Shown: piece by piece, positions 39,620-64,000 of the stretch
Layout: the number at the start of each line of letters is the position of its first letter
Position numbering within the stretch: position 1 is the stretch's first letter
Source of the DNA: Hyphochytrium catenoides
Taxonomy: Eukaryota > Protista > Hyphochytriomycota
Assembly (NCBI GenBank): GCA_900088475.1
Contig: FLMG01000988.1
Location: 1 to 64,000, forward strand
Direction of reading: 5' to 3'
Length of the DNA stretch: 64,000 nucleotides
Notes under the pieces: generated by a model
What the model saw: the letters and a program-made list of their open reading frames with translations, nothing else
What the model was told of the DNA's origin: nothing
The model's database searches: none
Position numbers and translations under genes: made by a program

Positions 39620-40460
<841 letters not shown>

Positions 40461-41393: not shown

Positions 41394-44300
41394 TCATGTG
41401 ATCTGGACGGGTACCTGCGCTGAACTCTTCTGAGGTCCGCCAAAGCCTTCATGACCATGGTCGTCCACTACGATCGACAGCGAATCCATCTTACTAATAG
41501 CACATGCTGTGCCCGACTCACAGCGGTACTTCAGGGTTGTCAGCACCTGATTCACCATAGAAAGGGTTCCAATAAACTCTAGAGAGGTCTTGGAAACCAT
41601 ATTGACATATAGCCCTGGGAGTCTGCTGACCAGCAGTCTGCCGCTGGTTGTTGTGACTTCCACAGTAATGGTGGAGTTCCGTTCAACACCAAAGCCGTCG
41701 ACCAAGAACTTCTCGTCCAGATCGACATCTGCAATCGAGATCATGCCAACAGTTGTGTCTTCATCCACAACCGCCGTAATGGGCGAGGAGGAATAAGAGA
41801 TAATCGGCGGATCGTTGACGGGGAGGATTTTCACAGTGAGAACTTTAGAAACCGTGAACGAGGGTCCTGTGTTATCCGGCCCAACTGCATCATGTACCGT
41901 CACAGATAAACTGTCGTCACCATTGATGTCGCGTCTTCCAGTGTATTGTACTATCCTCAGGGCTAGGTTAACATCTGTTAATGTTCCCTGAAACTGGATG
42001 CGCCTGGAACTGGTAGAATTGCCTACAAGTATAACTAAGGAGGGGGGCACAATTCCGAGTGTCAATAGACCTTTTTCACAACTGAGCTCTACGGTCAGCA
42101 GCCCGGATCCAATATCCACGTCATTGATGGCGATTGCTTGATCCACTTCGAACTCATCTACGAAGGAGCTCATGGACCAGGCTTCCCGATAGATATCAGA
42201 CAGCTTAGATGACACTGCCGTCACTTTCTTAGCCGGGAAGTACAAACTGGAGCTTAGAGGTGTCAGAGAGATAGGAAAAGCTCTATCCAGGCTTGTTACA
42301 TCTACCACGAAGTCGGCATTCGTTTCCTCAAAAGCTCTTCTTGTACCTGCCTCTGTCCCATCAGTAATCCAAAGCTCTTGGCCGCCAGATTGGCCACTAG
42401 CAACAAAGTATAACTCGGTGGTAGGAGAGCCGCTAAAATGCCATCGCGGCGTGAAGACGGTGAAGTAGGAGGCAGATGAGCTCGCCGACCCAGGGAGCAC
42501 ATCCAGAAGTAGGAAGGTCCCCTCATTGAAGCCATTACTCCGCCAGAGCTCAGAGCCATGAGTGCCATCAGAGGCTTGGAAATATAGAATGCCATTGAAA
42601 CTCGTTAAATACCGAGGGTTCGAGGAGGCAGTCTTTCCTCCAGAAATAGGAGAAGTGTTGATGTCCTTCACCAGCGCAGCAGACTGACTGACCATATCGT
42701 ACTTCCATAACTCGACGCCATGAGTCCCGTCCTCTGCCGCAAAGTAAAGCGTGTGGTCCACAACTAAAAGAGAGCTTGGATCGGAGCTACTTTGGCCTGT
42801 GAGGTCAATCGTGTGGAGGGAGACAAAGGGGACCCTAAGGACAAGTACAAGGGGATGGAGTGGCTAATGGCAAGGGAGGGGGAGTTGACTCAACACCCAA
42901 CTAAATAAAGAGAAGCTTGTGGCACATTTACCTGGGTTGATGTCAACCACAATCCTTGTCCCAGCTTGTGAAGAGTCTGAGAGACCCCTCGCGATCGGTT
43001 CAAATCTGGAGACGCCATCGCTAACCCATAACTCGCGGCCGTAGGAGGGTGTGAAAGCAGTGAAATATATGTGCCCAGCATGTGCTGTCAAGTACAGGGG
43101 GTCGGAGTCCTCTGAGCCTTTATTGATGTCCGCAACCATAATGGTCCCTACACAACGCCGGAAACTTAGTAGCAGAAAGCCATACAGTCAATTATTTTTA
43201 TGCTCACCTGACGCTGTGCCATCTGTACGCCAGAGTTCTCTGCCAAGTAATGAGCTGGTAGCCGCGAAGAGAACGAGGTCGCTGTTTAGTGATGTCATAA
43301 AAGCAGGGCTAGAGCTTCGTGTCCCAGGGTTCAAATCAGCCAGTCGTCTCGTCCCGGCTTCGCTGCCATCGGACACCCATAGCTCCGCCCCTGCCCCACG
43401 TAAGCACGGACTGTCCTTATGTCTTTCGTCAGCTCTTTCTTCGCAGCGGTTGCTTCCTCGCATGCAGACAATGCCAGCAAACTCATTCGTATTGAGCCCT
43501 GCAGGGTCATACTCTACTACGTTGCTGTCCTTTCTCCCGGCATGCTTGAAAGCTTTCGTGTTCACTGAGTCCGAGAACCTGAAATGTGTCCTTTTGAGCC
43601 CACCCCAGAAGAAAGCATCCCATCCGCATTGGTGCCAGTAAACGTACTCCTCCTCATCTCCAGGTCGCCTTCCTGCGGCTTCGTCAGAGTGAAAATAATC
43701 CCTCCCCTCGGAGGTGGACATCCAATGGTAGCCACTGGGGCATTCGTACAAGTACGAGGTGTCCCAAGTGTTGCTTCGTGACACCGCATAAAATACATCC
43801 GAATGAGTACTGCTAAGCCGCCATCCTCCGCAGTGGTCTGCCAGATGCAATGGCAACATCCATGTCGTATCGATTCCATCAGCTTGGAAGAGCAATTGAT
43901 TTTTGAAGATGGTGAGGAAAGAAGGCATGGAGCCCTCAGGACCTAGTCAACATAAGAGAAAGAAGCGGGTCGTAAGCTTACAGAAGTTAAGTCATAGCAA
44001 AGTCATAGCAAAACCCACAAGAACCCAGCCAAAGATGGTATGTACATCAGTCAAAGTGAGATAAGATCGGACAAACCATGGAAGAAGGTGAGAGCATGCT
44101 TTCCCTTCGGGCAAACATAGCTTTTACTGTTACCTGGTTTGAGATCTTTCAACCTCACGCTTCCTGGACCTGTTCCGTCGGATTTCCAGAGCTCCTCGCC
44201 TGCCTCGCCATCACTGGCTTGGAAGTAAAGATACCCATTCCATGCTGTGATGAAGCTGGGGTTAGAACTTTTGGATCCAGGATAGATGTCCTTGACCATT

Positions 44301-47300
44301 TGCTTCCTCCACGTGTGGTCATCATAGCCCCAATCCCCACTGTCGTGTGCTTGTCGTGCCCCTTCTGTTCGCCAGAGCTCGTATCCGGCATCTGCTTCTG
44401 GTATCGGCAGCCTAGCAGCCCGGTCACGATAGAGAGCACCCTTGATTTGTATGGTGGAGTCTTCCCTCAGTTCTACAATGCTGGTCCCGTCCTCTCTGGT
44501 TGGAAGGGTAATAGTTGGTGGATCATTGACGCTCTCAACAGAGATTCGGATAGTTTGGAGATCAAATTTGGGTCCTCCGGTCCCCCTGTTGCCAAGATCA
44601 TTGCAGGAGATATCGACTCTTGTTTCTCCTGCGAAATCCTTGTTGCCCTTAAAAAATAGGTACTGCATAGCTCGAGTAAGATCCTCAAGGTTGCCTGCAG
44701 TCGCATGGTGCCAGAAGAGGTAAGTGACTCAAAGACAAGCAGTGGGGATTTCAGAACACTCATGGTGAGTAGGAACTCCTATCTCAGAGCTGGGACATCT
44801 CACACTCAAACATGAAAAGAGCGAATGGAGACATTAGTGGCAATTTACTTCTCAAAAGCGACTTGTACTTCAGCCACCTACCTTTGATGGAGAGGAGAGC
44901 ACTCTCATACCCGCTTCCCATTGTTATCATGATGTCACTAAATGAAGATGGAGCCGGGCTCGCTAGGCTAATGTTGTGTTGAAAAGCGATGGACTTGTTG
45001 ATTAGGGATATTGTCCCATCTGCGGCGGAGAAGCTAAGCTCGAGTAGGTCTGCAGACGATTTTCCCGTCGGGTTCACGTCCACATCCCTGACCGTTATGC
45101 CCTGAAGGTGCAGAAAGCTGTCCTCCAGCACAGAAAACCAAGTGGACCTCTGAAGGGCAAGGGATTCTTCATCGGGAGTACTCACTTGATGCTCTCGAAT
45201 GGCGAAAGGAAGTCCAATGACTGGCGGGTCGTTGACGCCTCTTACATATACAAAGACATCAGCTGACGCTGATAAGGAAGCCTCATGACCGTCCAACCCC
45301 ATATCGCTGACAGTTAACTGTATTCTATCCGCTCCGTCCTGATCTGAGTTCCAGTTAGGCTCTGGGAGGTAAGACACTGCAGAGAGAGCAGCTTGCAAGT
45401 CCTTCAGCCTGCCCTGGATCTCGAGGGATGACCACAACGCTTGTGGAGGTGATCCACTTGTGTGAGAAGTCGCCGGTGCAGTCTCATCCTCGGCGATAAG
45501 ACTAGCGTTAGCCCGGGCGCCGACGTCCCAGATAGCTGGGCCACCCTGTAACCTCGCTGTCTCTTGCGCTTCTGAGGGGACTGAAAACAATAGTCTTTCT
45601 GTAACAGGAAGCTGCACACTTCCCCGAAAGACTTCCAATCGTACGGTTAACAAAACGTCTACTGACGTATCTCTATCCAAGGGGTCATACGCATCGACAT
45701 CGTCTATCAAAATGGGAGGAAGCAAAAGGGGATGGTCTTCCTCAGTCCAAAGTATCCAGTCGGCGGCACTTATGGTTGGGGCATCATTTACAGGGAGGAC
45801 AGTGATAGCGATGGACACGGAGGTTAGCTGTGGTCCGCCTAGCCCTGTGTAGCCCTGATCATTTGCAGTAATCGTAAAGACGTCTGGGCCATAGAAGTCT
45901 TTCTTGCCTCTATACATCATCTCTGTCAGTGCCTGATTTAGCACCTCCAGGCCTCCGCTTAGCGTTATCGTACCCTCTTGCCACAAGGTAGCACTAGGTG
46001 GCTCCTTACTACCGAGAAAAGTAACGCCGGTGAGAACGGGAAAATTTAGTAAGCCATGCAAAGTGGAGATCTTAAGCATGAGGGTTCCTGTGGTCTCTTC
46101 TACATCGCCATCCTCTATCTGTAATCCGCTGATCTTGATAGGCGTGTCTTCGTAGACTGTCAAATGATCCTGTTCACCCTCCGCCTTGCAGAAACTGCCA
46201 TCATGGAGGGAATTGAATAGACCGTACACGAGGGTATCGCGAGGATCCTTTGCACGACAGTAGTACCCTTTTTCTTTGTATAAAGCCGTGTGTATGATCG
46301 GTGGGTCATTTTTGCCGGACACTGTTATAAACCGGATGACAGCGATGGAACTCTTGGGGCCCCCGGTCCCTCTATGGCCCAGATCGTCCACCGTCAAGAC
46401 AATCTTTGCCGGGTCCTTTCTTAAACTCGTCCACTGGGGCCGCGAGAGAAAGGTGAGCTCTCTCAGCGCTTCATTGAGCTGTTGTAATGTTCCGGACAAG
46501 ATAATATGTGTGTCTGACTCACCATCACCCTCAATGAAGAGCGCTCCGGAGTGTTGGCCAAGCCCAACAACTCCGAATTCTGCGTCAACTTTCAACAGAA
46601 GCCTATCGTCTTTTGCGCTATCGTCCTCTATCTTTATATTCCGCACAATCCTAAGGCTGTTCTCCTCAATTACGAGAGGAAGTTCTGGAACAAGGACCCG
46701 AGGAGGATTGTTCACACCAATGACCTCCACTTCAACTGTCGCGATGTCCTGGAGCGCTTCGCTTTTCATGGTCTCATTCCCAAAGATAAAGGCTTCGGCT
46801 TTCACTTTGCGCACCGTGACCGTAACCGCATCTAAACCGTTCCAGAATGGTCGAGGTCGATAGCAGATATGTCTCAGTGCAGCATTAGCGTTTCGTAACG
46901 TGGCAGTGAAGACAAGGGAGTGCGATTCAGTATCCTTCCCGCTGAAGTAGAGTCCAGCAACGGTAGAAAGCTTCACAATACCCTCCGAGCATTTCAATGA
47001 TAACCGGTACACATAATCAACTACCGACTCTTGCACGGAAACGTCCTCAATCCATGCCCCAAAGCAGCTTGTTGTGTCTTCAAAGAGAGAGAGACGATCA
47101 ACAGCGACGCTTTGGGTGGCTCTACCCTGCTGCAGCTGTTCTTTGGGCGAAAGGGCTGCCCTGGTCATACCCTCGACGTGAAGAATGGGCGCTTGTGCCT
47201 TTTTCCTAGTAAACAAGGTGATCGAGGCAGCGTCCGATCTCGGTAAAAGGTGTTCCTCTACGTGGGTAGCAAAGAAAGCAAAAGTAAGCGCCATGCGCGA

Positions 47301-50300
47301 TTTTCGGAGAGCTTGATGTAGAGGGCTATAGAGCAAGGTCAAGATGCCATAGGCCAAAAAGCTACTAGAGCAGTAAACAGGAGTCAATCGACAGGGGTGG
47401 TGTGAACGCATACAAACTCCCATAAGTAATCAAGCCTTCCCAATCCATAATGACTAAGATCACTCAAAACAATTCTGTACCTTTTGCGGGGCTTTCAATC
47501 TCGAGGAAAATTGCGTCAAACTCTTCGTGATCCGCGTTGGAGTAGGGGTCCGAGGAGTAGATTAAGCATTCCACCGCAGCATTCAATGCTTTCAGAGTTC
47601 CGACGACGGCCAGAAAGGAGTCTCCTCTCAGATCGCCAGCGAGATATCTCAAGCCCGACGTGCTGGAGAGTGACAATTGACCTAGCTGGGCATGCGCTCT
47701 CAGTGTGATAAGCGAACCCGGAGGAGAGGAAGGATCTTCCAAAGAGATGCCGCAAAGTTCTGTGCTGCCGCCATGGATGACCTCAAACCTTCTTTGTGAG
47801 AGAAGAATCTATAGGACAACGGTGGCCAACATTGCGTTAGAATACTGTTTAGTTTAGAGTGTCAAACGCTCAAAGAGAGACGGAAGTCAATTCTAGAGGG
47901 AAAAGACCAACTACGATCTCTACCGTTCACCCTTATGGGGCCCTGCACTGACCTTAGGAGGCACGAGAACCTCATCCACAAAGAGTGGTAGAATTGCTGC
48001 AGATGCCCTTTCTCCGCCAGATCCAACATTCCCAAGGTCATTAACAAAGAATGACAACATGTCTTCCCCGGTGTAGAAAAGATCGCCTGTGTAGCTCAGC
48101 GAAGCAAGCGCTAGGTTTGCTATGTCAATCCCTGCTACGAAATCAACGCAACGACGCTCTAACACCTCAGAGTTTGAACAGTTGCCCTCATTCTGCCTCT
48201 CATCCAGAAGTCGCAGAGGGAGGTCACGTGGGATTTGGAGCTTGCCCCTTCTGCACCTAACCGAGACTCGGAGCTCTCCCGCACTTCTTGTTCGTCGTAT
48301 GGAGATTGGTAAACTGTCAGAGATATCCACATCCCGAACAAGAATACCATCAAACGTTACTGCAGAGCCTGCAGGCACATGAAGAACGTCGACTGCGAGG
48401 ACACTTCCGATAGAGCTTCTTTGATCAGTATTCCCAGCGTAGTAGCGCATGCCAGGGAGATCAATTTCGGGTGCGTCATTCACTGCCTCTACTCGAACAA
48501 AGAGTTGGTTACTATGCTTCCATTCAACGCTCCCATGTTGTAGACCCACCGGCCTAGAAGCCTCTCTTCCACTGATCGGAGATACGACGAGCTGTAAATT
48601 CTCTATATCGAGGCGATAGTTGCTGTTCCAATCTTTTAGAGGCACGTAAAGGAGGTTTCTCCTTAGAAGCCAGTTGACTACGCAACCCGGTCCTGAGACC
48701 TGAAATGTGGTCTTAGAAAGTAGGCGTTTTTCGACCCCAAACTTCTGCCACGATCGTTCGTCAACATCTAGGAGCTGGAACGTGCCAAATTTGGCTCTAA
48801 TTGACAGTTCAACCGGTATTGATGGAGGAAAGCCTGGGATTTTCATGCCCTTAGTGGACCGATCACGACCGCTGAGATATACGGATGCCCGAAATGGATG
48901 CAGTTTGACCCCATACAAACTTTCTCCGCCTTCCAAATCTACGTAAAGGTCACTTCCCGTCCGATCAAACAGCCTCCTCGTTCCACGAGTACTTCCGTCA
49001 CTAGTCCATAGTTCGGTTCCGTGAACATCATCCCCTACAAGGAAGAGAAGCTGGGGAAACAGATCAGCCGGTCTATCCAGTCCCGGCTCAATGGTAGTCA
49101 ATGCCAACGGGAAGGAACTCTTTGATCCTTCGGCAATATCCTTCAGGAGAAATGTGCCACTCAGCGTTCCATCACTGACCCAAAGTTCCGCTCCCACGAC
49201 AGCGTCATTTGCTTGGAAGAAGACTTTGCTTTGGAAGGAGGTAATAAAGGACGGTAGTGAGCCCGCGGATCCAGGATTTATGTCGCACACTAGATGACAG
49301 CTGCTAGCAGCGATGTCTAATACCCAAAGTTCTGGTCCATGTATCCCATCATCGGCCTGCATGAAGAGAAGGCTATCTGAAAGAGCTAGAAAACGGGGGT
49401 TTGAACCTCCTGATCCTGGGCGGATATTGCACACCACATTGGTCCCAATGGCGGTACCGTCCGAAAGCCAGAGTTCTCTTCCATAGATCTCTTCTGAGGC
49501 GGAGAAGTAAAGTAAACCATTTGAAACAGTTAAATCTCTAGGAGAGGAGCTTCTGGCACCGAACTCAATGTCGGCCACTAGCTGGGTTCCCGCGGCCGTC
49601 CCATCTGTCACCCAGAGTTCTTCCCCGTGTTGTAAAGTAATTGCAGTGAACGCCATAATCTCCGAACTCATGACCGTCAGAAAGGATGGGGACGAGGAAT
49701 GGGCACCTGGCCAAATGTCCAAGACACGCGTAGTGCCTCTGACACTTCCATCGGTGACCCAGAGCTCCTTTCCTGCTCGGCTATTACAGTCCTGATCTTG
49801 TTCATCATGGCAGGAGCGCTCTTCTTTTAGACAAATTATGCCGGCAAAGTTAGCGGTCATAGTCCCGTACTCCACCGGATGGTCTTCACTCTTTCCAGCA
49901 TGTTTGAAGGCACCCGTGTTTCCTGAGTCAGAAAAGCGGAAGTGAGTCCTTATCCCTCCCGCCCATGTGTAGCCTTGCCATCCACATTGATTCCAGTAGG
50001 TGTACTGTGGAGAGGACACTTTTACCGAAGCATCTCTAGTTGTCTCCACGAAACGCTCTAAGCCCTCCTTAGTTGATGCCCAGTGGTAGCCCGCCGGGCA
50101 TTCATACAGGAAGTCCACTCTCCAACTAGTCTCTTCGCTGACGACAAAAAGAACTTTTTGGTCCACAGAACTTTCCCTTATACCATGACACCCATCAAGA
50201 CGCCAGGACGGTGGTCTCCAGGACGAGTCAATCCCTTGGGACTGGAAAAAAAGCATATTTCTGAACACCGCGAAATGGGAAGGATAAGAGCCCGCGGGCC

Positions 50301-53300
50301 CAGGCGTTAGGTCCGCCAGAAGACGGGTACCTAAGGAGCGATCAATTAGCTGGAAGTTGCTCCTCTGATGGAGAAAATTGGGATTGAGCTTTTCTGAAAA
50401 ATGAAACAGCGTCCACCTTAGCAATTTCACACCAGGGCTCTTACAAGTAGCGCACTCGAGTATAGTGTCTTACAAGCCGACATTGTTCAAGCAATGCTTA
50501 CCGTCAAAAGTTCCATCTGAGAACCAAAGTTCGGGTCCATGCTTTCCGTCGTCTGCCTGGAAGTAGATATAATCTCCATAGGTAGTGATGAACTTTGGGA
50601 AGGAGCCTTCGGGTCCGGGAAGCACATCTTTCACTCTCCAGACTCCTTCCTGGTTAGCCTCGCCGTAGGATAACACTCTTTCCCCTTTTGAAAGAGACAC
50701 CCTCCAAAGCTCATAGTCTCTGTCTGTACTTTGCAGGGGTTCTCTAAAGCATTCTTGGCGGCTGATGTTCTCAATTTGGACCATGTCCAATGTAAGAGGC
50801 TCATCTTCCTGAATTACCACGAGCCTACTCTTCACAACGACGTGAGGTGCTGCAGGTGCAGCATCTAGATGAATAAGAACCCGGGCGGCAACCTTTTCAC
50901 TCCTAAAGCAGCTCTCCGGCTCTCTTACAATGTTCTGAGAGAGGTTAGGGTTACAAACCTCTCGTACCTCCACCTGCAGACTCGCAGCTCCCTCAACCGG
51001 CTGCCAAGGAGCATGGTACTGGAGAGTACTGAGGGCTGAGTTGATGTCGCTTAGGGCTGCACTCAAAATTGCAGTGCTGAAACCGTGTATTAAATTCCCG
51101 TCGAGCTTCGTGAGATGCAAATGGTCTGTACTCTGTAGAGGGTTAAATTAGCTTACGCGTGGGAACGACCAAAAGGAATAAATGCTGGATAGAGGTTACC
51201 TGGAAAGAGAGCAGTCCTTGAGAGACGGAAAGAGACACGTCGTACAGGTCCGAGGGATCACCATCAAGCACTTGGAACATGGAGAGGCCCAACACACTTC
51301 CTTCAGTGGCGTGGAGCTCTAGAAACTTATCCTCTTCTGCCGTTCTTACGGGCGTTGCACCAAGTATACTTAGACTAACAGGGTCATTAACACGCTCAAC
51401 CAATATTGGGATCATTAGTCTGGCGTGCTTTGGACCCCCAGCTCCTAAGGAATGGAGCCAAAAGATACGGATTATAAGTGAAGGGCAATAGAGTAAAAGC
51501 AGAAACCAAATGGGAAATCGGAACCAAATGTGTAAAGAGGTAATGGTCGGTTGCGTAGTGAGAACAAGATGCTTGGTCAGGTCTGTGGAAATGGCGACGT
51601 TTGAAGACCATACCAGATAGGCCGTTATCAGAAGCAGTGATTTGAACCATGTCATGTCCAAAGAAGTTCTTTGGTGCAAGGTACACTAAAGATGATAGGA
51701 ACGCGTTCATGGAATTCAAGTCGCCCGAGCGATGAAGCTCCATAGTGCCGATCAAAGATGAGTAGTTGAGAATAAGGGTTCCTCTATCAGCGATGACTGA
51801 AAGATTATACATTCCATCTGACCCACTGTCAACATCCTTTAGTGTAGCGCGAGGTAAGAGCTGCGGTGTGTCTTGGTATGTCCTCACTTGACCAGCATCT
51901 GGACAACGGCAAGCGGAGATGGTGAGATCCTAACGCTTGAGAATGCATGAGATGATTTCTCCCTACCTTCAACAGAAAGAACCGGAGGATCGTTGATGGG
52001 TGCAATGCCCAGTGATATGGTGCGGAAGGATAGCGGGGCAGACACCGAAGAGACTCCAAGGAGACCCAGATTCTCCACCCTAACTCCTAGCTGCACCTCT
52101 CCATAAAGATTTGGGCCAGGAGTATATTCAAGCAAAGAGAGAAGGTGATTGACCTCCTTCATCTTCCCACTGACGGAAATCAAGTGACCTGAGAAGGGTT
52201 GAGGAAGGGTTGGAGCTGATCAGTGCATCAAGTAAGCTCTACGGAAGACATATAAGTTGACAATCAGAGTCACTCGGCTAAAACGAGAATGTAGTCCAAA
52301 TATTAGCAGGTAACTACTTGATAAGCTCAAGAAAATGCAGGAAACTGCTTGGAAGCCTTCGCACACATCTAAGACATAAGCAAAATTGATACCTGCACTT
52401 TCCCGCAATTCCACTGCTGACAAAGATCCCTGGTAGTTAATCTTTCCATAGTTAACGCGCTGCAACTCCTCTCCTTTGACAGCTGCGCCAACTCCTGTAA
52501 GTCCCTCACCCCCGAGCAAAAACTTGTGATCCTCCCAAGGGTTCTCGCGCTGAAACGCAATTGTCCAAATTCTTCCACCCTCCTTGTCCACTGGGCTGCC
52601 AGCCACCTCCACTGAAGCAGATGCATTTGAGCCAGAGAAAGGGGTAAGATCACATATCAAGCCCTTTATGTGCTCAGCCGTGGCGTTATAAGGGATAGGG
52701 CTTGTCAGGAATGGGCCGTAAGATAGACTGAACGTTCCGCCAATTGAATTTGCTGGAGTGATAGCGGAGACGCGGGTCTAGATTCGGGAAATTTGTAAGT
52801 GTCTGCTATGATGAGTTGGGAGACGAACGAGATTATGGTAGTTTGATGCGGCCAAAAAGTTGGAATAGCATAAGGATATTATGGTGTTACAGACTTCCAT
52901 GTAACGGTTACCTTGGCATTCGCTCCTCTTAGGCCGTCGATAATGTCAGGGTGTGGGAAGTCAGCAGGTAGTCCGCGGAAGGTGACTCTCCAGCGAAAAG
53001 AGTTTGGCGGGAAAGGCCCTGACCGCACTACAGATACATGGACATCCGATAGCAACGGACGCCACGTGGGTAGAACCGTCAGTTGGTTCCTGAATAAGTC
53101 CATAATGCGGCTTTCAACGCTTTCTCCAGGTCGTGCGCCATTCTCTAGCGACTCGCCTTCATCTTCTCTCCTTGCAACAGCATTAAAGGCTATAGGGTCC
53201 GACGAAAAAATCGCACCACTGTCACTGCGGAACCCCCTCAAGTCAAAAGACACTATAAAATGCCCCGAGATGACAGATTGCCCGCTTGTAGATATCTCAT

Positions 53301-56300
53301 AAACTGGGTCTACATGCTGGGCCTGTGTACGGATTTGATATAACCTGGGCAGACCGATGCCTAATAGACAATGAGGGTAGAGGAAACCGATGACTGATTT
53401 AGTCAGACCACCGATATATTATGAACAGCAACACGGAATGCAATCAGTTAAGACCCTTCGTGCGCAAAAGCCAAAACATTCAATGTGGCCAAACAAATTC
53501 CCCTCGGCTCACCTCTCTGTATTTGACGTATCTGGACCGCAGCTTTGTGTCCTTTGGTTTTCGACGCAGAGTCATCTCCAGTCTGTACGGGAACAGTCAG
53601 GAGTTCTGAAGTCTCTGCAGAGAGCAATCCTCCCCAGCGCTGAGACAGGAACGTAATAAACCAAGTGAGCTCTCCATGTAGACCTTTTAACGACCTGGTC
53701 ACCTTGATAGGCCCAAGGATCTTCAGCTCCTGACATGCACGTGGGATTGCGTAAAGGGGTTGTTGAGTGAAAGGTGGTCTAAGTGGAAGTACGCTGGATT
53801 AGGGCTACGCTTAGACAAACCTGGAGAGCATCTTGAACTTCCTCAGCTCTTGCGTTATGAGCTATTGGGCGACTAATTAGTCCGCTAAGAGACAGACGGA
53901 AACTCCCTGACAATGCCGTAGCGTATCGCTTAATTGTCAGGCTGATACTGCCATCGGACAAGGATGCCTGGTTGCCGATAACTAATGGGGCAGGGGACGA
54001 ACCCATAGAGTAAAACGTAATCAACCACAATGACTCTCCGATCTGTGGTTTGTTCTCTTGACGGGAAACAATAAACTTAGCCGGAGATCCTTTATCTAGT
54101 AGGCTGTTGAGCTTGCTCATTACCGACTCCCCTTCGCCAATCCCAGGACCACCTCCTGCGCCAGATAACCGTCAGGCACGAGATCAACTTAGCTGTCAAA
54201 AAGGAAGAAGTATGCGCTAAAGCAAGAGAGATTTCAGTAGAGCGAGCCCGGTGGACACTGTCTTTCACACATTACCCATAAGTTCTTGCATATCAGACCC
54301 CACAGCGTTCACAGCAATGGGTCCAGTCTCCCTTTGGGGGTCTGTCTTCCAGCGCAGGGTAAAATGACCCGCAACAGGTGCCGACCCGGTCCTCATGATT
54401 CGCAGAGCCATGATTAAATCCCTAGAAGACACAGAGGTGGACACCGACTGGACCTCAAAAGTTGAGACGTATCCAAAGCCAAAAGTGACGTTAACGATCC
54501 GATCAAGCTCTGGATGCTCCTCTGTGACGGAGAACTAGTCAGAAAACAATCTGCAATAGAAATACGACGGCTAACAAACTGTACCTTCAATGGGAAGAGG
54601 AGTTCGTAGCAAGGTTAAAGACCAAGACAGGTTAACGATTGGCAAGCTATTCAATAGATCCAGGTGCTCAGAAAAAGGATGAAAACATCACAGTGCAGGA
54701 AGCATAGGACGCGGTGGGATAAGCCGTTCGAATTCTTACCATACGGTCTGCTCTCTTGCTCAGGAAGCACTGGGAGGGAAAGCGATATCGGAACGGATGT
54801 GCCTTTATCCTCGTCCAGGCTAAGAACTGCTGGAGCCTGTATTGTTACCCGTTGTTCATTTTGTTGAACCTCTAGAGCCAGAATCTCCTTCGCAGTGCTA
54901 CTCCTACCATTAAGAGTCTTCTCTACCGAGAGATATACCTCCTGAGGCAAGCCAAACCCGAGCCTGACGGCAAAACTAACTGAAGCTAGGACTTCCGTTG
55001 CCTGGCGCCACTCTGCGATATATGTCAGATTGGAAGTGGAAGTCAAAGGGTTGTTGACCCAGAGGATGTCCGAAAATTCCTTCATAGGGAGAAACAGGGA
55101 CCCAGGAAAGGAAACGGAGATGGAAACGAGATAGGTGGCTCCATCCGGAGTGTTATCCGCAAGCCGGAGTCCAAAAAGTGGAGCAAGTAGAGTAAGCTCT
55201 CCGTCTGTCACCTTAGCAGACGGCGAGTCCAAAACTATCGTCACATTTTCGTTCGGAATGACCTTTGCCATAAGTGATAATGTGGCACCGCTAAGGTCGT
55301 CGTTGCTGTAGGAGTGTCCTTCTGTCAAATGCAGGTCGATGTTGTCTGCGCCTAGAAAAAAAGGTTGTGGAAAATAATATATGTGTGACAAAGCGATGTT
55401 CATCGCCAGGGGGCTTCCTACGAGCCTTAATGAGGAGTTACCCCTTGGTTCTTGAGTGTTAAAAATGCCAATTCCTTCCAAACTCGGCGATGCATGGAAG
55501 ATCCCATGGCTGCACGATATATTCAAGACCATCACAAAATCTTCCGGAGGTAGTTCCCAGTCAGGATACGTGAGCTGCACATGCGTCAAGCTGAAAGAGG
55601 CTCCACTTTCTACTTCTACAAAGGCCTCTCCATTCAGGACTGGCTTGTTCGTAAAGGTAAGCTGGGGCGCTCGTTTCAGCCTCTCTATCGCGACTCGAAG
55701 GTACTGAATCTTCGATACTCCACAGGCTGTCACGTTTAGTGACAGTATCTCCACTCCGTGGAAAGAAGTATGCGGCATATAGTGCAGACGCTGTACTGTT
55801 TCATGAACCTCTCTTAAAGCGCCATGCATGGTGTACGCCGAGTGAGAAGCTTCTCCTTCATAGACCCCTTCGGCGTCTAACATTACTATCCGACCGGACT
55901 TCTTTGCGAGTTCGAACGCGATCGTCCACGGGCATTTCCGCGTGTGGTTATTGTGAGGAACCACTTGCATAGAGGACAAAAAGAGTAACTCGCCCTCGAT
56001 ACCTCTATACCCTTGAGGTGGAGCCAGGATGTCGAAACTAGGCAGTTGGGCAAGACGTCTTACCCTCCAGGTCATTGTCGCGTTTAGGTGTCGCAACGGT
56101 TCGGAGGACGTTTCCAATGAAAATGAGGGCCCATTGGCGGGGAATCCATCGTCCCACACAACAAACGACACGACTTCATCTACGTCTTGGTGCTCCGTAA
56201 TAGGCAGGTAAGCCAGCGAGCTGAAGTAGGTGTTTAGCACATCCAAAGGGGCAGCAAAGGAGAGGACACCATGCGAACTGAGAGATGGTGTATTCAACCC

Positions 56301-59300: not shown

Positions 59301-62300
59301 GGGGAGGAGGGAGGGGGTTAAATAAGGGTTAGATCTTACTTTCTTCGACCTCCATTGACAGATGTATATGTATTGTATCCACTCCATCAAAGCGCGGCTT
59401 GGGAGAGTACAGAGCTTTCCCTAGGCCACAATTGACACTGGCCAGGGTGCCCTTCATAATAAAGGGGCGAGAAGCGGAAGCCGCAGTGGCGGAATTGAGC
59501 GCAGGACTAGGCATGGTCTCAGGAGGAATAGCCAATAGACCCTCGCAATAGCCCACCACATCGATGGTGCAGTTCCCGCAGGACAGGGTCAGTACTACCG
59601 TAGCGTCGGAATGCTCATAGTTTGACTTTAACGCAACTTCTTTCAAAGCAGCAGCCTATAGGTGCGAATGCAAAGGATGTTTAGCCATGTTGTCTGTGGG
59701 ACCGAGGGAGAAGGGCTGGAAAACCATATGATAAAAATTTTGCTATCAAACGTTTGTTGCATCCAAGACCTAGTTAGGTGTAGAAGGTTAAGCCGCCAAA
59801 AGGGTCCTAGTAGCTGTTACGCGGGAAACACCTTTACCTTAGTGCCCCTGACAAAAATAGACTCGGGCACGTTAAGGGTCAGTTCTTGACGAAGCTCCTG
59901 AACCCAGATATCAACTTTTAATCGCGTTTCTTGTAATCTTCCACCATCCAACATTCGGCCCGAAACCGTAAAGAGAGCTTCGACTGGCCCATGTTGCTGT
60001 GTTGAGGGTACAAAGCTGAGGGTCTTGAGGACTCTGTTAATGTCTTTGGCTGTTCCTTGGAAGAATAGCAGAGAGTTGAGGGCAGATGAGGAAGTGGTTG
60101 ACGAGATCACCTGCACACCACTTTTGTCCAACAGCATGATGGAGCCAGCAGGCCGAGTGACAATGGTGAGATCGAGTACGTTGGCTTCATCCTCAACAGT
60201 CACAGGACAGGGTGCGATGGACGGCAGTGGACAATGATCCTCAAGTCTAAGAGTAGAGAAGTGCAAAGTCTCATTCTGGGCCACCAAGTAAAACTCTGAG
60301 TCAATGGTGAGGGCTAGAAATGGAGCAGGAAATTAAGGTATGTATTAGCCCGGCCCCAATGCCCATGCGGCCGAAAAAGGTGGTGACTTACTTGGGGCTC
60401 TTGTAAATGGCAATAAAGCAAGAAATAAGACCTTCGTCGTAGTTGACAATGTCTGCCCTTGCTCATCCTCAGCCGTCATGACTAAGTTCAATATCCTTTG
60501 TGACACAGGGCCCGGGTAGAGTTCACGAACCTCCCATGCTAACTTCTCTGGAGATAAGGCAACAGACGAAGGCTCAACTAAAGGAATGTCACCAAGGGTT
60601 GGGGAGAAGCTGATCACCCAAGTTCGTGTGTGCTCTTGCCTGAGGGAATGGGGGATTAGCTCAAAAGAAAGTATAGGCGTTATAAACGGAAGGCATTTCT
60701 GGAAGTTTCAGTCGGAGCTACGGTGCTCGAAAAGAAATATGCGTTAAAAAACACCTCGTTCCGATCCTTACGAATCAAATCTTTGGATGCCTCGAACATA
60801 ATCTGGGAATGGGAATTCTTGGCGAAACAGTGCCAGAAACTCGTCCGACGAGGCATTGACAGGGACAGCAGGAATAGAGATGGTGTGCCCATTCAGCTTC
60901 AGCGAGATACTGCAGGATTAGAACCCAAGAAGGGAGAAGGTGAAAGCCCTTAGCGATTCGGCGAGTGATATGGATTCTTTCTGAGTTAGTCTCCGAGCGT
61001 GGCAACGGACTAGGTCGGAGGGGTCATTCCGAGAAGCAGAGGCCAAGAGCTCAAACACGCACCTAAAAGCACCAAAGCGATCAAGTCCGGCCATATCGTT
61101 CTCAATCAGGACATTGGGAGTCTCAGTCCCTCGCAGCTGGACGAGGTCGTTCTTGACCAAAGTGAACGACAATGCCGTGAAAGGCACATTCCGGAGCTCA
61201 ACCCCCCAAATGTACTCACCATCCATCGATTGTAGAGATCTAGTGACAACCACGCGCTGTGAAGAGGATCAGCTAACAAGCAAACGCTAAGGACGGCGTC
61301 ACAACAGCACCAACCATGCCGGGAAAGACGTCGTCGGTCCCTCCTTCTTGTATAGTAGTGACAGCAACTTCGCCATGGGGAAGGGATGCGACGCCAATTG
61401 AAAACTGCTCAGAGTCGCCTAACTCAAGAGGAAAGGTGATGCGCCAAGAGAATCCTCCTTGACTGTTGATTGAGCGCTGAGTTAAGGTTGAGTTAGTACC
61501 TTGTCTGATCAGCGACAGAAGCAGGATAATACCATACCTCGATTTGCAAACCCGCAAAGACATCTTGGAGGGTATTGAGTGCATCCCGCAATTCGTCGCT
61601 CCCTGTAAAGCATCATATTCATCATTAACTTACTGCTAAGCTTCGAACGGGTCTCAGAAACAGGACATCATATAACGTATGCAAGCGGTGGAATAACGAT
61701 GAAGAACATTGAGTAGTAGTTTTTAAAGTTTCGGGAACATCTTGACATTCCTCACCTATGTTGTAGGGTAGAGGACTGGTGCTCTTGCCGTTCGCATAGA
61801 CCGTGAAATAGCCAGAAGTCACTTCTGAGGCTGGGGCAACAGCTTTTGTGGTGATCATCTACGTGCCGTTTAGCATCATCAGGAATACGGTAAACAGAAG
61901 CAAGTTAGCCCACCGAGCGTAAACAAAGGGAGAATAGGCCAATCGAGGACGTTGCTTTGGAAGGTTCCGGTAATGAAATTATACAGACCTGAATCTCAGG
62001 CACACTGCTATCTCCGTAGATACCATCTCTGCCGGCGAAACAAGACATTCCAAGGATGCCCTCTTGTAATGATAACGCTTGGTCTGGGCCAGACCTCACG
62101 GGCAAAGCATTAAAAGGTATGGGAGGAGAGGAACAGATGGCGTCTTCGGGTCTGTCAAAGTGCCGGTTCGGGTAGGAAAAGAAAAGAGTCCGGAGGTCTA
62201 TTCCCAGAGAGAAAGATCCACCCGCAATGCCAGCTTCAGAGGAAGTATGGATTTTCATCTTGAATCTATCATCTGGGACACGGACAGTAATTTCCTGAGA

Positions 62301-64000
62301 TTCTCCCCTGAGATTTCCTTCTTCCCCAATCCTTCTCCGACCCACCACATAGAGGCGACCAAGATCTTCCATTACGCTCTCTAGAGAGCCAAACACATCA
62401 ATTGTGCTCGCATTGCATTGTAAGGCGGCTGTAGTTGACTGGTGAGGAGGAGCCTCACAAAGAATATCGGTTCCTGCTTCCAACCGCACCTACAAGAACA
62501 AAAAAGACATGAGAAACGACGGCTGGAATATGTATACCCAACACTACTGAACATACCCGGAAAAGCTCGGAACTCCTTCCAAACTTACTAGACAGGGAGA
62601 GAGAAGACAGAGAAATCAGGGTGTTTTCTTGGCCAAACATCATTCCAGGACCGAACAATACAGGGATGACGGGAGCTGAGGTCATCATAACGTGTAAGCC
62701 AACCGTGGAAATCTGCTTTCCTGGAAGTTGCAAACTAACATTCACCAATCCTATTAGTGGCTCTTGCCGAGCTAGTTCGCTGTTTCGTACAGGTAACAGC
62801 TCCAGGGAGGCCAGTGTTCGATTAAGATCAAGGGCCGTTCCTTCGACTGTGAGCGTAGTCCATAAAGGATCTACGGCAAAACTTAGACCCATCTCCTCAA
62901 TCTTTTCCCATCGTAGCTGACTCAAAGAGAAAGGACAGTGGCTCTGAAATATCACCTCTGCGTACTCTGAATCCCTTAGCTCCACGAATGAGAACTCGCG
63001 CTCGGCACGTTCCCCAAGGACAGAGCCGCATATGGGCACCATGCTATCCCTGATCATTCTAGCAACCACTTCCACTGAATTAGCGGTGGGATCTTCTAGT
63101 CTAAGAAGCCCTGCCTGGACCAATGGAGTCTTCTCGGAAGGTGGTGTTATCATCAAAGAGAGCCCGTTCCCGCCGACCTTCTTCCAAGCCTCAGACAAAA
63201 TGAGGCCATCAGCCGGTGTCCTGACTACGAAGTATATCCTAAACGTCGATTGGGCCTCCTCAGATTTTGCCCCTTCCATTCTTACGAACGCCTGTTCCGA
63301 GCCCAGCGTTTGATCCAGGACTTCTTGCAATTCTGCAAGGGTAGCGTCAATGCTGAGAGGGGGAGACACGATTGGCTCCCTCCCTCTGTGCAAAATCTGT
63401 AAAGCAAACTGTCCGAAAGGAGGACTGGAACCATCGGCAACGGAGCGCACATGCAATCTGGCGCTTTGAGGTTGAGACAGGGAGAGCTTTGAAACATGTA
63501 ACAGGGGTACATCACTACAATGGTTGACGAGCGTAGTGGGAGGAAATGGTAAGCAGTAGAAAGGTCAAATAAGAAGAACGTGATTGGGAGAGGGAAAAAG
63601 TTAGCTCGTTCTGATTTGGGGTGGGTCCTCATCTTTCGTACCCGCGCTTTGATAGGAAGGTAACGGTCCAAGAATGGAACCCTTCCCTGGTGGTGCTTCG
63701 CTCTACGGATACTCTTCCAGTGTTTGGAAGATTCTCCAGCGCAGCTCGCAACTCATGCGAGGATGCTTCCAAGGAAATTGGAGTGGTGACTGCAGACTCC
63801 TCCCAAGGGTAACAGGGAAACTGCAGCTGGAATGTGCCCCAAGGCTTCACTGATCCCATGGAGATCACCTCGGTCGTGCTTTCCAGTGAGCCTGTCGTTT
63901 GATGATTACCCAATTAATCTCAGAGATGAGCTCAAGATACTAATCACTTCAAGTACGCGGGACCGAGACCAAAGATTACAATAAAGGACAACACTAAACG
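41394..64000 (-). CDS. Giant extracellular adhesin-like protein: cadherin-like repeats, two ELWxxDGT beta-propellers with Cys-rich inserts, and N-proximal beta-rich repeats; about 30 exons, 5' end outside the window
   Basis: There is a continuous chain of minus-strand ORFs. Frame-preserving GT-AG junctions were checked by hand at the 57095/56905 junction and for the introns between about 50500 and 42800; the rest are plausible but less rigorously checked. The protein has many (V/I)NDxP..ED..DxD..G.L..LN.AL..L.Y..G.D..V.D.G..G.GG units and 16 ELW motifs. It stops at 41394 after VPVQIT. Confidence 0.9.

What the first reader, a model, noticed from the sequence alone, without database searches (positions are those of the whole stretch)
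41815..50860. Russian-doll architecture present twice: a beta-propeller inserted inside a cadherin-like domain
Seen: a normal repeat runs VNDPP..ED..I.I.DxD..L.V.L..G.L. In the 3' unit the repeat begins VNDPPTITLP..LREDSTIQIKGAL (about 44530-44435), is interrupted by 8 ELW motifs, and resumes at IAINDVDIGSGLLTVELSCEKGLL (about 42135) with no new start motif. The 5' unit does the same: APHVVV..IQEDEPLTLDMVQIEN (about 50850-50770), 8 ELW motifs, then PVELSIRAKFGTFQL (about 48815). The propellers match blade for blade: YELWR first, a non-canonical sixth motif (ELWVLDIA / ELWKYDMV), and GTRRxF at the end. Inference: a duplicated super-module in which the propeller projects sideways from the rod rather than sitting in series.
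Basis: partly seen in the sequence, partly recalled or inferred. Interest (0 to 1): 0.75.

Follow-up and report, generated by a model that had tools for sequence, protein, structure and literature searches.

The report
Propeller nested inside split cadherin-like domain
A giant secreted, adhesin-like protein of a water-mould-like protist carries two copies of a module in which an eight-bladed propeller interrupts one rod domain, a layout known so far from bacterial giant adhesins.

Summary
On the minus strand a multi-exon eukaryotic gene (GT-AG introns) encodes a long row of cadherin-like (tandem-95/Cadherin_4 type) repeats and two ELWxxDGT propellers with eight ELW motifs each, at the stated coordinates.

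A profile built only from canonical repeats matches the stretch before each propeller to the first about 30-40 positions of one repeat. It matches the stretch after the propeller to the remainder. The two units are collinear with each other, flanks included.

The same split is seen in 27 related proteins from oomycetes and unnamed relatives. The first repeat match after the propeller is N-truncated in 25 of 34 units against 48 of 311 other matches (p = 4e-12). Bacterial ELWxxDGT proteins have complete repeats on both sides.

AlphaFold2 on an intron-free orthologue (Pythium insidiosum) gave an eight-bladed-type propeller. With the better alignment the N-half formed three strands at pLDDT 64-75. 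The tools give no coordinates, so contact between the halves was not verified.

The closest known principle is the "split domain" of bacterial RTX adhesins. Sideways projection is an inference from that analogy. I rate it a new variant of a known kind.

The parts
50767..50862 (-). 5' unit, N-half of the split cadherin-like domain (strands A/B, APHVVV...IQEDEPLTLDMVQIEN)
   Evidence: Matches positions 8-41(51) of the local 139-position repeat profile, i-E 0.006. Aligns with the N-half of the 3' unit.
48862..50715 (-). 5' unit ELWxxDGT propeller: 8 ELW motifs plus closing strands, interrupted by the phase-1 intron 50331-50501
   Evidence: TIGR04534 at 315 bits and 52.8 bits on the two exons. Motif list. 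Intron GT..AG.
49772..50235 (-). Cys-rich module inserted in a blade of the 5' propeller
   Evidence: Aligns with the 3' copy. A profile of the two copies finds it only in the stramenopile-type relatives, usually twice per protein. No Pfam match.
48496..48813 (-). 5' unit, C-half of the split domain (VELSIRAKFGTFQL... up to the next VNDAP)
   Evidence: Matches profile positions 49-116, i-E 0.0011. The next full repeat starts at residue 659 of this exon.
44787..48495 (-). About seven canonical cadherin-like repeats between the two units, on several exons (the last of them finishes on the exon 44054-44728, up to about 44540)
   Evidence: Full-length profile matches, i-E 1e-26 to 1e-37. Cadherin_4 E 1.9e-9. 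Orthologues have the same number of repeats here.
44438..44539 (-). 3' unit, N-half of the split domain (VESVNDPPTITLP...VELREDSTIQIKG)
   Evidence: Matches profile positions 2-40, i-E 0.006. Aligns over its full length with unit-2 N-pieces of oomycete loci.
42225..44383 (-). 3' unit ELWxxDGT propeller: 8 ELW motifs plus the closing strand SSLYFPAKK; phase-1 introns at 43943-44133, 43148-43207 and 42797-42931
   Evidence: TIGR04534 at 88, 78, 69 and 143 bits on the four exons. Motif list. Splice sites read.
43388..43877 (-). Cys-rich module inserted in a blade of the 3' propeller
   Evidence: The exon carrying it is 47% identical to the 5' unit over 246 residues. Profile matches in relatives. 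No Pfam match.
41829..42137 (-). 3' unit, C-half of the split domain (AIAINDVDIGSGLLTVELSCEKGLL... up to the next VNDPP)
   Evidence: Matches profile positions 32-128, i-E 9e-17. NF012211 positions 39-94 of 98, E 8.9e-5.
41394..41828 (-). Last canonical repeat and the stop codon (41394-41396), taken as the C-terminus of the protein
   Evidence: Profile positions 2-137, i-E 1e-36. Pythium and Phytophthora orthologues end in the same way. The next gene downstream is PCNA, at 39623-40324.

Best explanation
The window holds the 3' part of a giant, secreted, adhesin-like gene of a stramenopile, an intron-rich relative of the oomycetes. The protein is a rod of cadherin-like beta-sandwich repeats.

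Near its C-terminus two of these repeats are split domains. After the first two or three strands (about profile position 31) the chain leaves the sandwich. It builds a complete, ring-closed eight-bladed ELWxxDGT propeller, which itself carries a Cys-rich module in one blade. It then returns to finish the same sandwich.

The two super-modules are duplicates of each other and are separated by seven ordinary repeats.

Shown: the homology of the two flanks to complementary parts of one repeat, the duplication, and the conservation. Inferred: that the halves pack into one sandwich, that the propeller therefore projects sideways from the rod, and that it is a ligand-binding head.
For: - Profile complementarity. 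The profile was trained without the flanks. In the 3' unit the N-flank matches positions 2-40 and the C-flank 32-128 (i-E 0.006 and 9e-17). In the 5' unit they match 8-41 and 49-116 (0.006 and 0.001).
- No room for separate domains. Only about 10-20 residues separate the N-flank from the first blade. No start motif precedes the C-flank.
- Duplication. The units are collinear over the flanks, the propeller, the insert and the following repeat.
- Conservation. In 24 relatives (34 units) the first repeat match after the propeller starts at profile position 26 or later in 25 of 34 cases, against 48 of 311 other matches; Fisher p = 4e-12. Where an upstream match abuts the propeller it covers positions 1/2 to 31-42.
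- Aligner test. MAFFT aligns N-parts of 47 canonical repeats to residues 1-30 of the Pythium insidiosum unit and C-parts to residues 622-733. It splits all 47 whole repeats across the propeller.
- Not a gene-model artefact. An uninterrupted 2784-codon frame in that species carries both units.
- AlphaFold2. The N-half forms three strands at pLDDT 64-75 and the C-half seven strands plus a helix at pLDDT 75-90. Together these are the same elements as in the neighbouring canonical repeat.
- Propeller. It spans model residues 207-762 and matches propellers at Z about 20, among them 8prj (v31Bagel8) and 6g6o (Ika8), whose names mark eight-blade designs, and BamB and YxaL, which I know as eight-bladed. 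The secondary-structure string fits a closing blade built from both ends of the propeller.
- Secretion. Signal-peptide-like N-termini in four full-length relatives and no hydrophobic stretch typical of a membrane span.
- Bacterial contrast. Bacterial ELWxxDGT proteins have complete repeats on both sides of the propeller.
Against: - The N-half matches are short and weak on their own (i-E about 0.006).
- The first AlphaFold2 run left the N-half unstructured at pLDDT about 30.
- In the second run its confidence is only moderate. No coordinates or contact maps are returned, so pairing of the halves is not demonstrated.
- The structure searches were filled by propeller matches and did not test the sandwich.
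- In the window's 5' unit the C-half is a weak match and lacks the I-x-I-D-x-D strand, so its split point is uncertain (profile positions 31-48).
- The exon joins in the window are inferred from splice signals, reading frame and homology, not from RNA.
- The folded protein is an orthologue (about 30-45% identical), not the window's own protein.
- The bacterial contrast rests on only 6 downstream and 3 upstream cases.
Confidence: 0.72

Rival explanations
1. In-series arrangement. The stretch before the propeller is only a decayed remnant or linker. The stretch after it is an N-terminally shortened sandwich that folds on its own. The propeller would then sit in line with the rod.
For: The N-half matches are weak. 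The first AlphaFold2 run left the N-half disordered while the C-half folded at moderate confidence. Bacterial relatives place the propeller in series.
Against: The N-half keeps the VNDxP start and the hydrophobic E-D strand pattern across distant relatives. The boundaries are complementary and conserved. A sandwich lacking its first strands would expose its core (general knowledge of Ig-like folds). With the better alignment the N-half is predicted as three strands at pLDDT 64-75.
Confidence: 0.17
2. The N-half strands dock elsewhere, onto the preceding canonical repeat or onto the closing blade of the propeller, rather than completing the C-half.
For: The tools cannot show which partners the three predicted strands have. 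The junction region is the least confident part of both models.
Against: The N-half is homologous to the strands that the C-half lacks. The preceding repeat already matches through to the end of the profile: positions 83-137 in the window's 3' unit and 2-137 or 1-138 in several relatives.
Confidence: 0.08
3. Artefact: a misassembly or wrong exon chaining makes two unrelated genes look like one interrupted domain.
For: No RNA data were available for this genome. The exon joins are inferred.
Against: The same order occurs in an uninterrupted open frame of Pythium insidiosum and in near-intronless genes of other oomycetes. Splice sites are canonical and keep the reading frame and the repeat register.
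Confidence: 0.02

Closest known systems
Split Ig-like domains of bacterial RTX adhesins (MpIBP, Vibrio cholerae FrhA, Aeromonas hydrophila AhLap)
   Same: A giant rod of beta-sandwich extender repeats. Near the C-terminal end single sandwiches are interrupted after the first strand(s) by a complete ligand-binding domain whose two ends lie side by side. This projects the domain away from the rod axis (PMC12077191, PMC10865825). Nesting within the guest domain is also described there: an insert inside the vWFA domain.
   Different: Here the protein is eukaryotic. It has a signal-peptide-type N-terminus in relatives, and no RTX repeats appeared in the Pfam scans that were run. The host is a tandem-95/Cadherin_4-type repeat. 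The guest is an ELWxxDGT propeller of about 560 residues, far larger than the lectin, peptide-binding or beta-roll guests described. Binding and projection are not shown here.
Bacterial ELWxxDGT-repeat proteins with tandem-95, Cadherin_4 or Big_9 repeats (for example P0209, Magnetococcales)
   Same: The same two building blocks, at up to about 45% identity in the propeller. There were 38,849 matches in the representative library.
   Different: Where the local repeat profile could be applied, the repeats on both sides of the propeller are complete, so the arrangement is in series. None has the Cys-rich insert.
Integrins: the alpha-I domain inserted in the alpha-subunit propeller; the beta-I domain inside the hybrid domain inside the PSI domain
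   Same: Classical nested extracellular adhesion domains, including a domain inserted into a propeller blade (PMC12422189 for the alpha-I domain; the beta-subunit nesting is from general knowledge).
   Different: In integrins the propeller is the host, not the guest. There is no sequence relationship.
[quoted passage not shown]
   Same: Two conserved regions about 500 residues apart in the chain that act together (abstract of PMC7066176). That they form one Ig-like domain is from my memory of the paper, which I did not read here.
   Different: Intracellular enzyme. The intervening region is largely disordered rather than a folded guest domain (from memory, not checked here).

Membership tests
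ELWxxDGT repeat protein (NCBIfam TIGR04534) | Tandem repeats of about 47 residues scoring above the curated whole-protein cut-off (65 bits) | tested here: met
   315.4, 142.9, 88.1, 77.8 and 69.1 bits on five exon pieces. The sixth piece, with only two repeats, scores 52.8 bits.
ELWxxDGT repeat protein (NCBIfam TIGR04534) | The repeats fold into a closed beta-propeller | tested here: met
   Tested on the orthologue only. The AlphaFold2 propeller is mostly at pLDDT 85-96. It matches solved propellers at Z 20-21 with about 300-325 aligned residues, including 8prj (Bagel8) and 6g6o (Ika8).
Bacterial cadherin-like domain (Pfam PF17803 Cadherin_4) / tandem-95 repeat (NF012211) | Score above the curated cut-off for the canonical rod repeats | tested here: inconclusive
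   Cadherin_4 at 38.3 bits against a cut-off of 25.1 on the 879-residue exon: met. NF012211 at 45 bits against a cut-off of 90: not met. The repeats are a divergent branch of this superfamily.
Bacterial cadherin-like domain (Pfam PF17803 Cadherin_4) / tandem-95 repeat (NF012211) | The split domains themselves match the family over both halves | tested here: inconclusive
   With library models only the 3' C-half matches (NF012211 positions 39-94, E 8.9e-5). With the local profile both halves match, in complementary ranges.
Classical (metazoan-type) cadherin, Pfam PF00028 | Match to the cadherin EC repeat model | tested here: not met
   No PF00028 match at E up to 0.1 in any exon tested, nor at E up to 0.01 in the full Pythium oligandrum orthologue. 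Not filed as a true cadherin.
RTX-adhesin split-domain architecture | One beta-sandwich domain whose sequence is interrupted by a complete guest domain | tested here: met
   Met at the level of profile homology. Three-dimensional pairing was not verified.
RTX-adhesin split-domain architecture | The two ends of the guest domain lie next to each other | tested here: inconclusive
   The secondary-structure string suggests a closing blade built from the first strands (207-230) and the last strand (755-762) of the propeller. No coordinates were available to measure the distance.
RTX-adhesin split-domain architecture | [quoted passage not shown] | tested here: not met
   This is a eukaryotic gene with spliceosomal introns. 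The protein ends directly after a cadherin-like repeat. No RTX family appears in the Pfam scans that were run. It works like these adhesins but is not a member.

The most novel reading that the evidence does not exclude
A three-level nest (beta-sandwich containing an eight-bladed ELWxxDGT propeller containing a Cys-rich module), present twice, is the ligand-binding tip of a giant secreted adhesin conserved across oomycetes and their relatives. It is assembled from bacterial-type parts, possibly after an ancient gene transfer. It arrived independently at the same 'split-domain projection' solution as bacterial RTX adhesins.
Probability: 0.3. Interest if true: 0.65.

Novelty: new variant of a known kind. 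Interest (0 to 1): 0.5.

Why it matters
If the halves do pack together, this extends the split-domain rule to eukaryotes. In bacterial RTX adhesins that rule is used to pick out ligand-binding domains.

It would also mark two propellers, each with a Cys-rich insert, as the likely binding heads of a conserved and so far uncharacterised protein of about 5000 residues. The protein occurs in oomycetes, a group that includes plant, fish and human pathogens.

It would give a first structural context for the very large ELWxxDGT family. That family had 38,849 matches in the representative library, no solved structure detectable by sequence, and no mention in the searched literature.

Tried and rejected
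- **Folding the window's own super-modules.** Both are broken by introns. I folded an intron-free orthologue by reference instead.
- **Enriching the alignment with N-part and C-part fragments of canonical repeats.** Each set aligns cleanly alone in local MAFFT runs. Mixed sets misalign in any proportion tried. In the alignment tool the N-parts also misaligned without any C-parts. Alignments A3, A4 and A5 were therefore not used.
- **Using whole canonical repeats as alignment rows.** Rejected for folding, because it would feed the answer into the prediction. It was used only as an aligner test.
- **Minimal target with whole orthologues (A7).** This misaligned the N-half. Adding the flanking repeats fixed it (A8).
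- **Structure searches of both models.** The lists were filled by propellers and did not test the sandwich.
- **Sequence search of solved structures.** No match.
- **Pfam on the Cys-rich insert and on the other upstream modules.** Nothing found. The ESM Atlas gave only weak leads.
- **Look-ups that failed.** P0110 is not on record. P0140 is too long for the contig look-up.
Full report
**What is in the window.** The region lies inside a very long minus-strand gene of a eukaryote. Open frames are short and scattered. The frame changes between neighbouring coding pieces coincide with canonical GT..AG introns of 60-191 bases. The assembly has 61 Mb in 4759 contigs. Coding pieces of this gene are recognisable from about 64000 down to a stop codon at 41394-41396. 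The next gene downstream is PCNA, at 39623-40324.

Most exons encode a divergent cadherin-like repeat of about 139 residues. It scores 38.3 bits on Pfam Cadherin_4 (above the cut-off) and 45 bits on NCBIfam tandem-95 (below the cut-off). No classical cadherin model (PF00028) matched.

**Check of the observation.** The repeats are ELWxxDGT repeats (TIGR04534, up to 315 bits). After the eighth motif comes one more strand pair without an ELW motif (SSLYFPAKK in the 3' unit, ASVYLSGRD in the 5' unit). By its sequence pattern this is the second half of a blade whose first half is the N-terminal YELWR segment. No VNDPP-like start motif lies between either propeller and the segment that resumes the repeat. 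The genome holds only these two propeller units of this kind.

**Test of the split.** I built a profile from 16 canonical repeats of the window and kept all four flanks out of the training set.

| Unit | Flank before the propeller | Flank after the propeller |
|---|---|---|
| 3' | profile 2-40 (i-E 0.006) | profile 32-128 (i-E 9e-17) |
| 5' | profile 8-41 (i-E 0.006) | profile 49-116 (i-E 0.001) |

In both units the next full repeat begins directly afterwards. So each pair of flanks adds up to one repeat.

- In the 3' unit the I-x-I-D-x-D strand is clearly the one after the propeller (AIAINDVDI). The weak overlap before it (GALYRDRAA) is probably the exit linker.
- In the 5' unit that strand is missing after the propeller. 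Its split point is therefore uncertain, between profile positions 31 and 48.
- The two units align collinearly over N-half, blades, Cys-rich insert, C-half and the following repeat. This fits a duplication of an already nested module.

**Relatives.** A full library search returned 38,849 ELWxxDGT proteins. Only five of the best 150 shared the Cys-rich insert. They are giant hypothetical proteins of Pythium, Saprolegnia and Thraustotheca. Further searches added Globisporangium, Nothophytophthora, Phytophthora, Albugo, Aphanomyces and several unnamed metagenome or read-archive proteins. That makes 27 proteins in all, most with two units separated by about seven repeats.

- The first profile match after the propeller starts at position 26 or later in 25 of 34 units, against 48 of 311 other matches (Fisher p = 4e-12).
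- Where a match abuts the propeller upstream, it covers positions 1/2 to 31-42.
- In one distant relative (P0256) the boundaries are 1-31 and 33-124.
- In Pythium insidiosum a single open frame of 2784 codons carries both units. The arrangement is therefore not a splicing or assembly artefact.
- Twelve non-stramenopile ELWxxDGT proteins could be scored with the same profile. The repeats next to their propellers are complete: upstream matches end at position 138 in 3 of 3 cases, and downstream matches start at 1, 1, 1, 5, 17 and 24. That is an in-series arrangement, on a small sample.

**Aligner test.** I cut 47 canonical repeats at profile position 31|32 and aligned them to the P. insidiosum unit 2. 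N-parts alone went to residues 1-30 and C-parts alone to residues 622-733. Whole repeats were split across the propeller in 47 of 47 cases.

**Structure prediction.** I folded the uninterrupted P. insidiosum unit 2 instead. It is the orthologue of the 3' unit, about 30-45% identical.

- *Run 1* (739 residues, 23 alignment rows, many of them fragments). The propeller was good and the C-half moderate (pLDDT 60-83). The N-half was unplaced at pLDDT about 30.
- *Run 2* (1033 residues including both neighbouring repeats, 17 full-length orthologues in the alignment; one search shows the N-half well aligned). Mean pLDDT was 78.
  - The N-half forms three short strands at pLDDT 64-75.
  - The C-half forms seven strands and a helix at pLDDT 75-90.
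  - Together these are the same set of elements as the canonical repeat that follows in the same model.
  - The propeller spans model residues 207-762. By the strand pattern, its last strand and first two strands share a blade, and the Cys-rich module interrupts the third blade.
- *Structure search.* Z was 20-21 against solved propellers, among them 8prj (v31Bagel8) and 6g6o (Ika8), named as eight-blade designs, and BamB and YxaL, which I know as eight-bladed.

The tools return no coordinates. Contact between the halves, the distance between the propeller's ends and the angle to the rod therefore remain unverified.

**How it most likely works.** Four full-length relatives begin with signal-peptide-like sequences. 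No hydrophobic stretch typical of a membrane span was found, and the proteins end right after a repeat. The protein is therefore probably secreted.

I infer a long rod with two laterally mounted propellers near its C-terminal end. Each propeller would present its far face, and a Cys-rich module, to a ligand. This is an inference from the architecture and from the analogy below. No binding has been shown.

[quoted passage not shown] The guest's N and C termini lie adjacent, and guests can themselves carry inserts (PMC12077191, PMC10865825). The present case works like that but is not a member. It is eukaryotic, and the Pfam scans that were run showed no RTX repeats. Its host is a tandem-95-type repeat and its guest is a propeller of about 560 residues.

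The Pythium ultimum genome paper reported 'true' cadherins in oomycetes (PMC2926784). The repeats here do not match that model. No paper in the searched library contains the term ELWxxDGT. I found no description of this layout.

**Verdict.** The nested reading is well supported by homology and conservation, and only partly by structure prediction. The sideways projection is an inference. It is a new variant of a known kind, of moderate interest.

Noticed in passing
43388-43877 and 49772-50235 (-): A Cys-rich module of about 130-150 residues interrupts one blade of each propeller. It is found only in the 27 stramenopile-type relatives, usually twice per protein. It has no Pfam match. The ESM Atlas gave only weak leads (a rotifer 'antifreeze' cluster at 0.91, diatom DUF7495 at 0.89).
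   Followed up: partly
50331-50501, 43943-44133, 43148-43207, 42797-42931: All four introns inside the two propellers are phase 1 and split a Gly codon at a repeat-equivalent spot (after D-x-x-P or D-G-T-x-x). In oomycete loci L001, L002, L004, L005 and L006 the open frame breaks at the same point of the unit-2 Cys-rich module. I take this as a conserved intron. It is absent from the Pythium insidiosum locus L003.
   Followed up: partly
52223-54534 and about 60900-63913 (-): Upstream exons of the same gene carry another repeated module of about 90 residues, with the pattern G-x-F-x-L ... W-x-(I/V)-T-F. It has no Pfam match.
   Followed up: partly
39623-40324 (-): The next gene downstream encodes PCNA (PCNA_N and PCNA_C, E 1e-36 and 5e-52).
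   Followed up: yes
L001, L003, L004 (oomycete loci): The orthologous giant gene is flanked by a Biotin_lipoyl-domain gene downstream in Pythium oligandrum, P. insidiosum and Phytophthora fragariae. In two of the three it is also flanked upstream by a CNNM-domain gene. This looks like conserved synteny. It was not checked in the window's genome.
   Followed up: no
window 47974-50328 (-) as query: The ELWxxDGT family is very large (38,849 representative proteins at E up to 0.001). It has no solved structure detectable by sequence, and the term appears in no paper of the searched library.
   Followed up: partly
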